A DNA stretch of 63,812 nucleotides, counting the filler, from Octopus bimaculoides (taxonomy: Eukaryota): NCBI RefSeq assembly GCF_001194135.2. It is 5 parts of 5 records of this genome, joined end to end, with 100 filler letters (N's around TTAATTAATTAA, not from the genome) between each part and the next. Parts side by side here need not be neighbours in the genome. Positions count along the whole stretch, not along the records: positions 21,624 to 37,280 come from NC_068984.1; 4 more parts are not named here. The stretch is one strand, 5' to 3'. Below, one piece after another: positions 21,580-25,895 of this stretch. How positions within the stretch are numbered: the first letter of the stretch is position 1; each line of letters begins with the position of its first letter. Below the pieces are notes generated by a model. That model was given only the letters and a program-made list of their open reading frames with translations, had not been told where the DNA came from and searched no databases. A program made the translations under genes and the position numbers.

Positions 21580-21689
21580 NNNNNNNNNNNNNNNNNNNNN
21601 NNNNNNNNNNNNNNNNNNNNNNNTGTATATATATGTGTATGTATATATATGTGTATGTATATATATGTGTATGTATATATATATATGTG

Positions 21690-21725
<36 letters not shown>

Positions 21726-21726
<1 letters not shown>

Positions 21727-22960
21727 TAGCAGAGCCACCCGGCGTTACCCGGGAATGAAATTGTTGCTTATTGGTACTTGGAGACTTTTACGAAAATTAA
21801 AATGAGGATTAAATGAAAAAAATTATTTACTTGAATATCCTCACAAAAGTAATTGAAATAAATGGCGATTGTGGAACTGAAGGAATTTTGGTGATACATT
21901 TGATAGAGGTAGTAGAGAGCCAATCTGATGATAAATCTGACCTTGGATCTTGAAAGTTTGCATGAATCCTGGCTCAGTTATATCTTTCTTTTGTGGCCCC
22001 AAATGATGTCATCTGTAGAGCAGCATTGTACTGTCTAATTTTGTTTTGAAAGTGCTTGGAATTTTGATCAGTTGATGATAACAGTTTCTTCAATGGCTCT
22101 GGAGGTTGGGGGACTGCAGGGAGTTTAACCTTTCCACCACTGCAGCACAGTGCAAGTGTCTCTCCAGGCCACTTCCTTGCTTTACAATGAATGCACTCAG
22201 TTGTCATTGCACCAATGGAAACTCTAGTGTCATCCGCATGATGAACTGCTGGATCATAANNNNNNNNNNNNNNNNNNNNNNNNNNNNNNNNNNNNNNNNN
22301 NNNNNNNNNNNNNNNNNNNNNNNNNNNNNNNNNNNNNNNNNNNNNNNNNNNNNNNNNNNNNNNNNNNNNNNNNNNNNNNNNNNNNNNNNNNNNNNNNNNN
22401 NNNNNNNNNNNNNNNNNNNNNNNNNNNNNNNNNNNNNNNNNNNNNNNNNNNNNNNNNNNNNNNNNNNNNNNNNNNNNNNNNNNNNNNNNNNNNNNNNNNN
22501 NNNNNNNNNNNNNNNNNNNNNNNNNNNNNNNNNNNNNNNNNNNNNNNNNNNNNNNNNNNNNNNNNNNNNNNNNNNNNNNNNNNNNNNNNNNNNNNNNNNN
22601 NNNNNNNNNNNNNNNNNNNNNNNNNNNNNNNNNNNNNNNNNNNNNNNNNNNNNCTTCTGTTAGTAAATTATGAAATTACTTACATCAGTAAATGTGAGTA
22701 AACTTTTAGTGAGAACAGTAACGATTGAAGTGAAGGTGAAAAAAAACTATGGCTACCGGAAGTTGACATTGAGGAACCTTTTTAAAGAAGTGAATCTTAA
22801 ATATAAAGCAATATTATTTATTTTTAATAAAAAAATCAAATGAAGAGCCTAACATTTATCCGAGGTCAAATTATTCATGCTTCACAAGTATGGAAGTAAA
22901 TGGTGAAGCCGTTTTCACGTGATAAGCGATTACACACACATCTCTATTTTATATATTAGA
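21726..22960 (-). mobile_element. Internally deleted Helitron with both termini, inserted in (TA)n
   Basis: Minus-strand 5' end A|TCTAATATATAAAATAGAG at 22960. 3' hairpin CCCGG-GTAACG-CCGGG (21753-21738), then CTAG|T (21729-21726). Gap at 22260-22653. Confidence 0.9.
21870..22207 (-). pseudogene. Helitron RepHel N-terminal fragment (frameshifted)
   Basis: CIHCKARKWPGETLALCCSGGKVKLPAVPQPPEPLKKLL...IRQYNAALQMTSFG, then after a frameshift PGFMQTFKIQGQIYHQIGSLLP...PKFLQF. Confidence 0.9.
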
Positions 22961-23189
22961 TATATATATATATATTGGAACATCCCATAAATGATGTAGC
23001 TTTTCAATTGCATGAACTAAAGGATGAAGGAAATAGAAGATAGATTTGTTACTATACCCCAACCATGGATGACACCAGGTAGCCCAAACTGTGAACGAGC
23101 TTTACTCAACACACTAATTAACATATTGACATATACTCATGAGTCCAAAAGATTACATATATATATATATAAATATATATATATATAAA

Positions 23190-23520
23190 ATTTTGGAAGT
23201 GTTGGTTGGATATTTGTTGTGCGATGACGCTCGATCGTGTACATATTTAACACTAGCACTTTCAAATTTTATATTGGGAATGCTACACTGATGATGAGAA
23301 GTAAGTAAACATGCTTCAATCTCGAAACACGTCTGTGGCTAATTGGAGTCGTGTGGATTCGTTATTTTACTCTTTGCCTGCGTAAAAAAGTGTGTTACTG
23401 TCTGGGAGATTCTTACAGTTGTAGAAAAGGAATTTTTAACTCTTATTTCTAAATTCAGTATGTGGTGAAGCAAATAACTGACCCCTAATTATAATTATGT
23501 TTACAATTATGGAATATTTA
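23190..23520 (+). repeat. Hammerhead-bearing non-coding repeat, homologous to 50165-50460 on the minus strand
   Basis: Shared downstream block ttcgttatttt...gtagaaaa...tatttctaaatt..gtatgtggtgaagcaa...aattatgttt and shared upstream gatg.cgc..gatcg. Confidence 0.8.
23282..23339 (+). ncRNA. Minimal type I hammerhead ribozyme, apparently intact; predicted cleavage after C23333 (GUC)
   Basis: GCTACA CTGATGA T GAGA (20 nt) TCTC GAAA CACG TC TGTGGC: 6-bp stem I, 4-bp stem II, 2-bp stem III, all conserved core positions present. Confidence 0.85.
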
Positions 23521-23872
23521 TATATATATGTGTATGTATGTATGTAGTCTATATACTCTCAAAAATTTTGTTAATCCTTCGTCACTATCTAGCTCATTCT
23601 GAACTTTTCTTAGAGCCCTTTTGTGACTCTGTGTGGTTGTTTGTGTGTGTGTGTAATATTATATAAATGATTGTAGTATGTACTTGTTTTTTGTTTCAGC
23701 ACACGATCTCAAATCCAGTCACTTGCTATGCAAGTATATCTCCCTAAAATACAAATAATATATTCAATATATTAACTAATATATGAATACCACATGCACA
23801 TGTATATATATATGTGTGTGTGTGTGTGTGTTTGTATACATACATAAATATATATTTATGAATATATATATG

Positions 23873-24051
23873 AAAAATAAGAAAATGGAGATATAGTATT
23901 TAATAAAGATTTATTATCAGGAAAAATCAAACATAATCCCTTACAGCTGTTTCAATTAAGCCCAATAAAGATTAAATAAATACTAAAATCATTTTGGGAC
24001 AAAATCTCTTCAGAGTAGTAGAAAAAAGATATACCCTTAGTTTTCTATGCA
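23873..24051 (+). repeat. About 180-bp repeat with an inverted copy at 25170-25353
   Basis: aaaataagaaaatggagat...cttacagctgtttca.ttaagc.caataaagattaa...gatatacccttagtttt.tatgca aligns to the reverse complement, roughly 85% by eye. Confidence 0.85.
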
Positions 24052-24065
24052 TATACACATATAAA

Positions 24066-24111
<46 letters not shown>

Positions 24112-24721
24112 AATATATGTGTGTATATATANNNNNNNNNNNNNNNNNNNNNNNNNNNNNNNNNNNNNNNNNNNNNNNNNNNNNNNNNNNNNNNNNNNNN
24201 NNNNNNNNNNNNNNNNNNNNNNNNNNNNNNNNNNNNNNNNNNNNNNNNNNNNNNNNNNNNNNNNNNNNNNNNNNNNNNNNNNNNNNNNNNNNNNNNNNNN
24301 NNNNNNNNNNNNNNNNNNNNNNNNNNNNNNNNNNNNNNNNNNNNNNNNNNNNNNNNNNNNNNNNNNNNNNNNNNNNNNNNNNNNNNNNNNNNNNNNNNNN
24401 NNNNNNNNNNNNNNNNNNNNNNNNNNNNNNNNNNNNNNNNNNNNNNNNNNNNNNNNNNNNNNNNNNNNNNNNNNNNNNNNNNNNNNNNNNNNNNNNNNNN
24501 NNNNNNNNNNNNNNNNNNNNNNNNNNNNNNNNNNNNNNNNNNNNNNNNNNNNNNNNNNNNNNNNNNNNNNNNNNNNNNNNNNNNNNNNNNNNNNNNNNNN
24601 NNNNNNNNNNNNNNNNNNNNNNNNNNNNNNNNNNNNNNNNNNNNNNNNNNNNNNNNNNNNNNNNNNNNNNNNNNNNNNNNNNNNNNNNNNNNNNNNNNNN
24701 NNNNNNNNNNNNNNNNNNNNN

Positions 24722-24783
<62 letters not shown>

Positions 24784-25554
24784 TGTATATATGGGTGTAT
24801 ATATTTATATATATACACGCATATATTTATATGTGTTTATGTATACAAACACACACACACTCACACACACACGCACACATATATATACACTGAATTAAAA
24901 GATGAATGTTAGACTTGTGTTAATATATGTTTCTGTATTAACTTTTTATAGGTTTTTCTCAATTTTATAAACAACCCACTAAAGTATTTTATTTATGATA
25001 CTTTTCTTCATTGTAATTTACTATTTAATCTCTATTTATTTACCCATTATTACCTTAATTATATCTACATATTATTCCTTGCCTATTAAAATAACCTGTA
25101 ACTTAGGAATATACCACTATTAGCCATGAATAATATTTTTCAGCCTGCTGTGATGATTCTATAATACAGTGCATAAAAAAACTAAGGGTATATCTTTTTC
25201 TAGTCCTCTGAAGAGATTTGTCCCCCAAAAATGATTTTAATAATTTTCATTTAATCTTTATTGAGCTTAACTGAAACAGCTGTAAGGAACTATGTTTGAT
25301 TTTTGCTGATAATAAATTTTTATTAAATGCTACATCTCCATTTTCTTATTTTCCAGTGGAATGATTATAAACCATTGGTTTATATACAAACCTATTATTT
25401 TATGAATATTATTATTCCCAATAAATATAATGTATTGAGCAGTAATTCATTGGATGATACCATCCATTAACGAGGCTAACTTAACCTCTAATTGAATTGT
25501 ATTTATGTATATATAAACTATTACATCAAGAAATATAATAACACTTGAACTAGA

Positions 25555-25895
25555 TATCACTGCACTGTTTCAAAGGTCCTGGTTATCCTCTCTAAAGTGA
25601 GGACCATGTACTGCAGTATCTTGGGATTCAAGGGCTCACAGCTATTTAATACCTTACCAAAATATCTGAGAGGTCTACATGGAACATGAATAGATATTTC
25701 CAAGAAACAACTTGATCTTTTGTTGTCTAGGGTCCCAAATGAACCTATAACTTGGCAGGAAACTCAAAAGAGAGCTGCAGTGTTGAACCCTCTCCTTCAC
25801 CAAAAGCCAATCACATAAGAATGGCCATTGAAAAGGGGATGTTAGCAGTGCCTCAGCATGGCCACAGCTTTTGAGCTGGAACCTATAAAAGAATG
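25555..25895 (+). mobile_element. CR1-clade LINE 3' end
   Basis: VRTMYCSILGFKGSQLFNTLPKYLRGLHG*...KKQLDLLLSRVPNEP...KRAA, followed by a 3' UTR and (AAGAATG)-like tail. Confidence 0.8.

What the first reader, a model, noticed from the sequence alone, without database searches (positions are those of the whole stretch)
23282..23339. Apparently intact minimal hammerhead ribozyme in non-coding repeat DNA
Seen: GCTACA-CUGAUGA-U-GAGA...UCUC-GAAA-CACG-UC|UGUGGC, with every conserved core base, a 6-bp stem I and a GUC site. Established: this minimal type I architecture, with a 2-bp stem III usually rescued by dimerisation, is typical of Penelope pLTRs and metazoan retrozymes. CACG is one CpG transition from the palindromic CGCG, and an extra base between A9 and G10.1 is known from natural hammerheads such as CChMVd. 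Inference: any plus-strand transcript here could self-cleave after 23333. No ORF is attached, so this is a non-autonomous ribozyme-bearing element.
Basis: partly seen in the sequence, partly recalled or inferred. Interest (0 to 1): 0.85.

Follow-up and report, generated by a model that had tools for sequence, protein, structure and literature searches.

The report
Lone minimal hammerhead motif, probably a retroelement relic
A complete small hammerhead-ribozyme motif really is present here and most likely descends from a Penelope-like or retrozyme retroelement, a kind already known in thousands of copies in animal genomes; as a lone copy with a weakened pairing site it probably no longer cuts itself.

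Summary
It has all the conserved core bases, a 6-bp stem I, a 4-bp stem II starting G10.1-C11.1, an extra U after A9, a 2-bp helix III and a GUC site.

In Markov sequence of the same composition, motifs of this quality are expected 3e-5 to 3e-3 times in this piece. A gigabase-scale genome would still hold tens to hundreds by chance.

The architecture matches the published minimal type I hammerheads of Penelope-like elements and animal retrozymes, including their signature unpaired base between A9 and G10.1. The motif also sits in the most CpG-rich 160 nt of a CpG-poor piece, in a 330-nt unique block bounded by (TA)n tracts. That suggests a fairly young insertion.

Against it:
- No Rfam hammerhead model matches, even at E<=10.
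- There is no second copy, tandem array, or RT/GIY-YIG remnant in the piece.
- Loop 3 is not palindromic, which weakens the dimer helix.
- I could not retrieve any family copies, so conservation and covariation remain untested.

Verdict: probably (about 0.6) a solo copy of a known element type, unlikely to self-cleave efficiently alone. A chance look-alike remains plausible (about 0.3). Interest is low to moderate.

The parts
23282..23287 (+). Stem I, 5' strand (GCUACA, positions 2.6-2.1)
   Evidence: Pairs with 23334-23339 as 6 bp including one U.G. Pair probabilities are 0.82-0.97.
23288..23294 (+). Core box CUGAUGA (C3 U4 G5 A6 U7 G8 A9)
   Evidence: Read directly from the sequence; matched by the descriptor.
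23295..23295 (+). Unpaired extra U between A9 and G10.1
   Evidence: extra=1. This is a conserved hallmark of PLE minimal hammerheads according to PMC4209133.
23296..23323 (+). Helix II. GAGA (23296-23299) pairs with UCUC (23320-23323), starting with G10.1-C11.1. It encloses a 20-nt loop 2 that can form a distal 5-bp helix (23303-23307 with 23312-23316) capped by AACA.
   Evidence: Predicted folds. Proximal pair probabilities are 0.89-0.94.
23324..23327 (+). Core GAA (G12 A13 A14) followed by A15.1
23328..23333 (+). C15.2, loop AC, G16.2, U16.1, C17. Helix III is only A-U and C-G around 2 nt. The GUC site predicts cleavage after 23333.
   Evidence: A 2-nt loop cannot close a hairpin, so helix III could form only between two copies. 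The ACACGU self-duplex is -2.9 kcal/mol with 4 of 6 pairs.
23334..23339 (+). Stem I, 3' strand (UGUGGC, positions 1.1-1.6)
23190..23519 (+). Unique 330-nt block containing the motif; putative body of a solo element. Its boundaries are inferred only from the flanking microsatellites.
   Evidence: Single-copy in the piece. It holds the CpG-densest 160 nt of the piece, with 9 CpG at 23222-23381 and o/e 1.35 against 0.31 overall, top of 621 windows. The fold of the whole block is not unusual (z = -0.48).
23192..23266 (+). Plus-strand-specific RNA hairpin of about 30 bp (7 of them G.U), 15 nt upstream of the motif. Whether it belongs to the same element is uncertain.
   Evidence: -25.7 kcal/mol, z = -4.2, 0 of 200 shuffles on the + strand; z = -1.1 on the - strand. 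It ranks only in about the top 2-3% of windows in the piece. No Rfam match.
23157..23187 (.). (AT)n microsatellite at the 5' edge of the block. A (TA/TG)n tract lies at the 3' edge, about 23520-23555.
   Evidence: TRF and sequence. PLEs show an insertion bias for microsatellites, including (TA)n (PMC8557442). This is weak evidence, because such tracts make up roughly 10% of the piece.

Best explanation
The motif is a genuine descendant of a hammerhead-bearing retroelement. It is either the pseudo-LTR or 3' end of a 5'-truncated Penelope-like element, or a solo monomer of a PLE-derived non-LTR retrozyme, inserted into a (TA)n tract of an AT-rich, CpG-depleted animal genome.

In the parent element, type I minimal hammerheads of this kind lack a stable helix III. 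They are thought to work only when two copies on a multimeric transcript pair their short palindromic helix III segments, forming a double hammerhead that cuts after H17. That releases unit-length RNA, which can be circularised and reverse-transcribed.

This copy keeps the full core, stems I and II, the extra base after A9 and G10.1-C11.1. But it stands alone and its helix III segment (ACACGU) is not palindromic. As it stands it is most likely a non-cleaving or very poorly cleaving relic.

Shown: the motif, its rarity under a null model, the local CpG richness, and the absence of a partner copy and of coding remnants. Inferred: the retroelement origin, the dimer mechanism (taken from the literature) and the loss of activity.
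For: 1. All conserved core positions are present, with the canonical metazoan stem sizes of helix I 6 bp and helix II 4 bp (PMC4209133).
2. [quoted passage not shown] Helix III with a 2-nt insert is the layout described there for Drosophila, rotifer, shrimp and mosquito PLE hammerheads. A long or interrupted helix II is also typical of PLE hammerheads.
3. Chance expectation in this piece is 2.8e-3 (stems only) down to about 3e-5 (with short helix III and G10.1-C11.1).
4. The motif lies in the most CpG-dense 160 nt of the piece. Seven of the nine CpGs lie outside the motif, and o/e is 1.35 against 0.31 overall. The other CpG-rich spots are SINE copies. This is the signature of a relatively young insertion, and it fits with an undecayed core.
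5. The block is bounded by (TA)n-type tracts, which are preferred PLE targets.
6. Most genomic minimal hammerheads occur as single dispersed motifs, and solo retrozyme monomers are common and evenly dispersed. A lone copy is therefore the expected state.
7. A plus-strand-specific hairpin sits 15 nt upstream, on the same strand as the motif.
Against: - No Rfam hammerhead family matches, even at E<=10 when only 66 or 171 bases are searched, and nothing reaches gathering thresholds.
- There are no RT or GIY-YIG remnants, and no Pfam domain at all, in any frame of the piece.
- There is no tandem array or second hammerhead, even allowing 2 core mismatches.
- Loop 3 is not palindromic.
- Loop 2 is 20 nt, unlike canonical type I motifs, and I recognised no loop 1 / loop 2 tertiary-contact motif.
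- Nearest-neighbour folding favours a competing GAUG:CGUC pairing (probability 0.75-0.8).
- No family copies could be retrieved by any route, so core conservation and stem covariation are untested.
- Relaxed minimal-motif searches have historically yielded many false positives (PMC6155905).
Confidence: 0.6

Rival explanations
1. Chance look-alike. The conserved boxes and short stems arose by chance in AT-rich neutral DNA, or within an unrelated young repeat, and the site has never encoded a ribozyme.
For: - The motif's information content is modest. The Markov null gives 0.10 per Mb per strand at the stem level, which means hundreds per gigabase-scale genome, and about 0.001-0.01 at stricter levels, which still means 5-60 per genome.
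- No Rfam hammerhead hit.
- No partner copy, no family copies and no PLE coding remnant.
- Helix III is barely present and not palindromic.
- Loop 2 is atypically long.
- A review warns that relaxed minimal-motif hits are mostly false positives.
- I do not know how many windows the first-stage scan read.
Against: - For this one window the expectation is only 3e-5 to 3e-3.
- The candidate carries several features that are not needed for a match but are typical of real PLE hammerheads: the extra base, G10.1-C11.1, C15.2-G16.2 and a GUC site.
- It coincides with the CpG-richest spot of the piece.
Confidence: 0.3
2. Currently active ribozyme. The locus belongs to a live element whose transcripts do self-cleave after 23333. 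This would happen either with a partner copy hidden in an adjacent assembly gap (22260-22653 or 24132-24721), or by pairing in trans with transcripts of sister copies or with host factors.
For: - The core and stems I and II are intact.
- CpG retention suggests a young copy.
- The N gaps lie 630 and 790 nt away and could hide collapsed repeats.
- From my recollection of De la Pena & Flores 2001 (not re-read here), an extra U at this position did not harm catalysis and even improved it.
Against: - Monomeric minimal hammerheads gave no detectable cleavage, and dimers cleaved only weakly and mostly at non-physiological Mg2+ concentrations.
- The dimer helix III has two A.C mismatches (-2.9 kcal/mol).
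- No repeat unit is visible on the sequenced sides of the gaps.
- No expression data are available.
Confidence: 0.08
3. C/D-box small nucleolar RNA. The AUGAUGA at 23289-23295 would be a C box flanked by a terminal stem.
For: The sequence contains RUGAUGA next to a 6-bp terminal stem. The only Rfam matches on the 66-base search are C-box matches to archaeal sR20 and sR3.
Against: - Those matches have E-values of 2.7-4 and cover only the box.
- There is no CUGA D box next to the 3' strand of the terminal stem; the four bases there are CGUC.
- At 58 nt it is shorter than typical C/D RNAs.
- No snoRNA family reaches its threshold.
Confidence: 0.01

Closest known systems
Minimal type I hammerheads of Penelope-like elements (Cervera & de la Pena 2014, PMC4209133)
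   Same: Full catalytic core, an unpaired nucleotide between A9 and G10.1, G10.1-C11.1, and a vestigial helix III (2 bp plus a 2-nt insert, as in the Drosophila, rotifer, shrimp and mosquito variants). Helix II is long or interrupted and loop 1 is poorly defined. These motifs occur mostly as dispersed single copies, and their elements favour microsatellite targets.
   Different: Loop 3 (AC) is not palindromic. Stem I is 6 bp, compared with the 4-5 bp reported for the Schistosoma min-HHR families. No pseudo-LTR, RT or GIY-YIG ORF is detectable nearby. No family alignment is available to show covariation.
Metazoan non-LTR retrozymes with type I hammerheads (Cervera & de la Pena 2020, PMC7229834; Li et al. 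2026 preprint, 10.64898/2026.07.22.740005)
   Same: A small non-coding unit (about 330 nt between microsatellites, within the range of small retrozyme units as I recall it) carrying one type I hammerhead with a weak helix III. Solo monomers are a recognised, evenly dispersed state.
   Different: Retrozymes are defined by tandem units that each carry a hammerhead, and there is no tandem here. The whole-block RNA is not unusually structured (z = -0.48). No expression or circular-RNA evidence is available.
Canonical dimer-dependent type I hammerheads of newt/axolotl satellite DNA and Schistosoma Sm-alpha
   Same: Helix I of 6 bp, helix II of 4 bp, helix III of 1-2 bp, a GUC site, and dimer-dependent cleavage when helix III is very short.
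   Different: Those motifs have short loops with conserved loop 1 / loop 2 tertiary contacts and a palindromic loop 3, and they are matched by Rfam hammerhead models. This motif has a 20-nt loop 2, no recognisable tertiary-contact motif and no Rfam match.
CChMVd (+) hammerhead with an extra core nucleotide (De la Pena & Flores 2001, as cited in PMC4209133 and PMC6155905)
   Same: One extra unpaired base between A9 and G10.1 is tolerated in a natural, active hammerhead.
   Different: That is a viroid type III hammerhead with stable helices and an extra A. Here the topology is type I, the host is an animal genome, and the extra base is U.

Membership tests
Hammerhead ribozyme (any type) | Conserved catalytic core: C3 U4 G5 A6 N7 G8 A9, G12 A13 A14, A15.1-U16.1, H17 | tested here: met
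   All positions are present at 23288-23294 and 23324-23333.
Hammerhead ribozyme (any type) | Three helices (I, II, III) radiating from the core | tested here: inconclusive
   Helices I (6 bp) and II (4 bp plus a distal 5 bp) are predicted with probability 0.82-0.97. Helix III is only 2 bp around a 2-nt loop, so it cannot form within one molecule.
Hammerhead ribozyme (any type) | Match to a curated covariance model (the Rfam hammerhead families) | tested here: not met
   No hammerhead family reaches E<=10 on 171 or 66 bases, and none reaches gathering score. PLE minimal variants also escaped earlier canonical searches, so this counts only weakly against membership.
Hammerhead ribozyme (any type) | Site-specific self-cleavage after H17 | not testable with these tools
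   Needs in vitro transcription and cleavage assays, or RNA-end mapping at 23333/23334.
PLE-type minimal / dimeric type I hammerhead | [quoted passage not shown] | tested here: met
   U at 23295; the feature is defined in PMC4209133.
PLE-type minimal / dimeric type I hammerhead | Conserved G10.1-C11.1 base pair | tested here: met
   G23296 pairs with C23323.
PLE-type minimal / dimeric type I hammerhead | Palindromic 15.2-16.2 and loop 3, allowing an intermolecular helix III | tested here: not met
   C15.2-G16.2 is complementary, but loop 3 is AC, so the hexamer ACACGU gives 4 of 6 pairs. The self-duplex is -2.9 kcal/mol against -8.9 for ACGCGU.
PLE-type minimal / dimeric type I hammerhead | Location in a pseudo-LTR flanking an RT plus GIY-YIG ORF (full elements), or in a truncated copy of one | tested here: not met
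   No RT, GIY-YIG or any other Pfam domain in six-frame scans of 22654-24131, or in the stop-free, non-microsatellite stretches of at least 45 aa elsewhere in the piece. A truncated solo copy would pass this test only through homology to a full element, which I could not check.
PLE-type minimal / dimeric type I hammerhead | Membership of a genomic consensus family with covariation and compensatory changes | not testable with these tools
   No other copy exists in the piece, and none was retrievable from the collections.
Non-LTR retrozyme | Tandem repeats of a few-hundred-nt unit, each carrying a type I hammerhead (at least 2 consecutive units) | tested here: not met
   TRF and repeat searches show no tandem around the motif. 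At best it is a solo monomer (definition).
Non-LTR retrozyme | Expression as self-cleaved, circularised RNA | not testable with these tools
   No transcriptome data are available here.
C/D-box snoRNA | C box (RUGAUGA) and D box (CUGA) brought together by a terminal stem | tested here: not met
   A C-box-like AUGAUGA is present, but the bases preceding the 3' stem strand are CGUC, not CUGA. Rfam gives only box-level matches with E>1.

The most novel reading that the evidence does not exclude
The CpG-rich 330-nt block, with its plus-strand hairpin and minimal hammerhead, is a recent copy of a still-active and so far undescribed small hammerhead-bearing retroelement family in this host. From memory of the SINE sequences, the host is possibly a cephalopod. 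In a literature search for octopus plus hammerhead ribozyme I found no description of hammerheads or retrozymes in octopus. The family's multimeric transcripts would self-cleave and circularise.
Probability: 0.12. Interest if true: 0.5.

Novelty: new member of a known kind. Interest (0 to 1): 0.3.

Why it matters
If genuine, this adds one more dispersed copy, and possibly one more host lineage, to the already very large catalogue of minimal type I hammerheads carried by Penelope-like elements and their retrozyme derivatives. It changes no concept. Such motifs are known in the thousands per genome, mostly as solo copies with little or no activity of their own. Its practical value would be as a seed to find the family in the source genome, and to ask whether that host expresses hammerhead-derived circular RNAs. 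If it is a chance motif, it is a useful calibration point: a perfect core with 6-bp and 4-bp stems is expected tens to hundreds of times in a gigabase-scale AT-rich genome.

Tried and rejected
- Rfam searches: whole piece at E<=10 (swamped by microsatellite 'miRNA' hits), 171 bases, 66 bases, and gathering thresholds. No hammerhead family was found.
- Search for a partner or decayed sibling motif on both strands. With an exact core there is only the candidate. With up to 2 core mismatches there are 8 hits against a null of 3.9 +/- 2.1, and none is convincing.
- Self-BLAST of 23190-23500 against the piece: single-copy.
- Search for PLE coding remnants with Pfam, on six frames of 22654-24131 and on the filtered stop-free segments of at least 45 aa elsewhere: nothing.
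- Attempts to retrieve other copies or orthologues:
  - exact look-ups of the two flanking small ORFs;
  - a metagenome pattern scan with CTGATGANGAGAN{16,24}TCTCGAAACRYGTC;
  - a chimeric six-frame protein search of the block;
  - a SINE-peptide search;
  - a SINE 22-mer metagenome scan.
  All were empty. The collections evidently do not cover this eukaryote.
- Literal sequence strings in the paper library gave only irrelevant hits.
- Rod-like or retrozyme-like global structure of the block: rejected (z = -0.48).
- The upstream hairpin as a known RNA family: no Rfam match. It is also not exceptional within the piece.
- tRNA genes: none.
- C/D snoRNA reading: rejected because there is no D box.
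- Protein-coding NUMT origin for the CpG-rich block: no mitochondrial protein domain in the standard-code six-frame scan, which is a weak test. An rRNA-derived NUMT cannot be excluded.
- Organism identification: only one distant Helitron-like homologue, from a Logan run. The octopus attribution rests on my memory of the SINE sequences and is untested.

Full report
**What is in the sequence**

The piece (21624-37280) is draft eukaryotic DNA with 13,517 real bases, 32.5% G+C and a CpG observed/expected ratio of 0.31. It has six N gaps and very abundant (TA)n, (TG)n and related microsatellites.

At 23282-23339 on the plus strand the sequence reads GCUACA-CUGAUGA-U-GAGA-[20 nt]-UCUC-GAA-A-C-AC-G-U-C-UGUGGC. 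In hammerhead numbering this gives:
- stem I of 6 bp, one of them U.G;
- C3-A9;
- one extra U;
- G10.1-C11.1 opening a 4-bp stem II;
- G12-A14;
- A15.1-U16.1 and C15.2-G16.2 around a 2-nt loop;
- C17, with predicted cleavage after 23333.

A descriptor I wrote for type I hammerheads allows an optional extra base, stems I>=4 and II>=3, and any helix III. It finds exactly this one site on either strand of the piece. The one exception is the phrase 'repeat DNA': the 330-nt block holding the motif (23190-23519) is single-copy in the piece, and only its flanks are microsatellites.

**Is it more than chance?**

I scanned 960 Mb of first-order Markov sequence built from this piece's dinucleotide frequencies.

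| Requirement | Per Mb per strand | Expected in this piece |
|---|---|---|
| Stem I>=6 and stem II>=4 | 0.10 | 2.8e-3 |
| Plus helix III span of at most 8 nt | 0.010 | 2.8e-4 |
| Plus G10.1-C11.1 | about 0.001-0.002 | about 3e-5 to 6e-5 |

For one window that is rare. For a genome of a few gigabases it still means roughly 5 to 560 chance motifs. The motif alone therefore cannot prove function. A review of the field makes the same warning about relaxed minimal-motif searches (PMC6155905).

**Comparison with described hammerheads**

Cervera & de la Pena 2014 (PMC4209133) describe most metazoan hammerheads as type I, with helix I of 6 bp, helix II of 4 bp, and helix III of 1-2 bp capped by a 2-4 nt palindromic loop. 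These cleave efficiently only as dimers.

For the minimal hammerheads of Penelope-like elements (PLEs), they list features that emerged beyond their search descriptor and argue against randomness:
- consensus families with covariation;
- G10.1-C11.1;
- palindromic 15.2-16.2 and loop 3.

The candidate has the second and third features and the 15.2-16.2 pair. Its helix III layout, GAAAC-NN-GUC, is the one they describe for Drosophila, rotifer, shrimp and mosquito PLEs. Their PLE hammerheads also have long or bulged helix II. Here helix II can be read as 4 bp, a 3x3 internal loop, 5 bp and a tetraloop.

The same paper reports that most such motifs occur as dispersed single copies, probably from truncated PLEs. 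A 2026 preprint finds solo retrozyme monomers common and evenly dispersed. PLEs carry their hammerheads in pseudo-LTRs near the 3' end and insert preferentially into microsatellites, including (TA)n (PMC8557442). The block here is bounded by (AT)n at 23157-23187 and by (TA/TG)n at about 23520-23555. That is weak evidence in DNA this rich in such tracts.

**Independent signals at the locus**

The 160 nt around the motif are the most CpG-dense of the whole piece. There are nine CpGs at 23222-23381, with o/e 1.35, ranking top of 621 windows. Seven of the nine lie outside the motif. The other CpG-rich spots are SINE copies. In a genome that has lost two thirds of its CpGs, this marks a comparatively young or unmethylated insertion. 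That fits with an undecayed ribozyme core.

Fifteen nucleotides upstream, on the same strand, lies a hairpin of about 30 bp at 23192-23266. It is strongly favoured on the plus strand (-25.7 kcal/mol, z = -4.2, 0 of 200 shuffles) but not on the minus strand (z = -1.1), because 7 of its pairs are G.U. It ranks only in the top 2-3% of windows in this G/T-rich piece and matches no Rfam family. I treat it as suggestive only.

**Evidence against**

- No Rfam hammerhead model matches, even at E<=10 with only 171 or 66 bases searched, and nothing in the piece reaches a gathering score. This is weakened by the fact that PLE minimal hammerheads were themselves missed by canonical searches, but it shows the motif is not a canonical type I hammerhead.
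- No RT, GIY-YIG or other protein domain was found in any frame of the piece.
- There is no tandem array and no second or decayed hammerhead beyond chance.
- The whole block does not fold better than shuffles (z = -0.48).
- Every attempt to obtain paralogues or orthologues failed. The decisive test, conservation of the core and covariation of the stems among family copies, could not be run.

**How it would work, and whether it still does**

The mechanism comes from the literature; it is inferred for this locus and not shown. On a multimeric transcript, two copies pair their short helix III segments into one extended helix. Each core then adopts the active fold and cleaves after H17, giving unit-length RNA that can be ligated into circles and reverse-transcribed.

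For this copy, thermodynamic modelling gives the following:
- Stems I and II form with probability 0.82-0.97.
- Helix III cannot close within one molecule.
- The segment ACACGU pairs with itself at only 4 of 6 positions, at -2.9 kcal/mol. The palindromic ACGCGU would give -8.9 and ACAUGU -6.0.
- A competing GAUG:CGUC pairing is predicted in about 75-80% of the ensemble. That kind of competitor is expected for any CUGAUGA/GUC hammerhead and says little.

Published assays found no detectable cleavage for single minimal hammerheads and only weak cleavage for dimers. With no partner in the sequenced DNA, efficient self-cleavage of 'any plus-strand transcript' is unlikely. A partner hidden in the N gaps 630 nt upstream or 790 nt downstream cannot be excluded.

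**Host and prior**

The SINE copies in the piece resemble, from my memory, the abundant tRNA-derived SINEs of octopus genomes. I could not test this, because the SINE-based searches were empty. If it is right, the prior is favourable. Octopus vulgaris has 31 recently active Penelope-like families and a PLE expansion at about 56 My (PMC13282606), and canonical PLEs universally carry hammerheads. A search for octopus plus hammerhead ribozyme returned nothing relevant.

**Verdict**

I put the explanations as follows:
- about 0.6: a solo, probably inactive copy derived from a PLE or retrozyme hammerhead;
- about 0.3: a chance look-alike;
- about 0.08: a still-active ribozyme;
- about 0.01: a C/D snoRNA, since it has no D box.

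If genuine, it is a new member of a well-known kind. Interest is low to moderate.

Noticed in passing
21800-22258 (-): Frameshifted relic resembling the N-terminal region of a Helitron Rep/helicase protein. It reads CIHCKARKWPGE..CCSGGKVKLP..IRQYNAALQMTSFGA, then continues in another frame as FKIQGQIYHQIGSLLP, and is cut by the N gap at 22260. There is no Pfam hit. The one homologue has 61% identity and comes from a Logan run, SRR11869394. The Helitron attribution is from my knowledge of the motif pattern.
   Followed up: partly
23192-23266 (+): A hairpin of about 30 bp that is stable only on the plus strand (-25.7 kcal/mol, z = -4.2; minus strand z = -1.1) because 7 of its pairs are G.U. Its loop region holds four CpGs. 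It has pre-miRNA-like dimensions, matches no Rfam family, and ranks in the top 2-3% of windows in the piece.
   Followed up: partly
31384-31560 (+), 35549-35740 (-), 36486-36900 (+): At least three copies of one tRNA-related SINE family, sharing the core CCAAAGCCTTGTGAGTGGATTT (alignment A1). The copy at 36595-36900 carries an extra internal segment of about 160 nt that is absent from the others.
   Followed up: partly
36540-36640: The 45 bases before the 10-N gap (36585-36594) are repeated exactly after it: ttcattcccactgtgtgtcttctactgtagcctcggaccgaccaa. This looks like a scaffolding or gap-closing artefact and not biology.
   Followed up: no
35735-35900 and 36060-36250 (+): Two copies of a second SINE-like repeat (gagctggcagaatc...gagttcaaattc...tttcatcctttt/tcattctttc...gtcaataaaa/gtcagtaaaa) with tRNA-like box motifs. 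From memory these resemble octopus SINEs. The organism was not verified.
   Followed up: no
31800-33070 (+): A head-to-tail array of at least four units, with copies spaced about 240-285 nt apart where uninterrupted. Units are 64-93% identical and each ends in a (CA)n tract. One unit is interrupted at about 32130-32410 by another tRNA-like insertion. No hammerhead motif occurs in these units.
   Followed up: partly
35130-35202 / 35280-35352: An inverted repeat with 73-nt arms, 97% complementary, and a 77-nt spacer, next to a 53-N gap. It is foldback- or MITE-like. It produces twin ORFs that both begin MIQHLFLAYRSPLLLVIPLIF.
   Followed up: partly
22260-22653, 24132-24721, 26284-27030, 28070-28415, 35058-35110: Four of these five assembly gaps (24132, 26284, 28070, 35058) abut (TA)n-rich tracts. 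The apparent long 'repeats' and 'inverted repeats' reported between these regions are just runs of N plus microsatellite. The many Rfam 'mir-297/mir-466' matches below threshold are microsatellite artefacts.
   Followed up: yes
21624-37280: Strong CpG depletion (o/e 0.31) at 32.5% G+C, with CpG-rich islands confined to repeat insertions. This points to a heavily methylated animal genome.
   Followed up: partly
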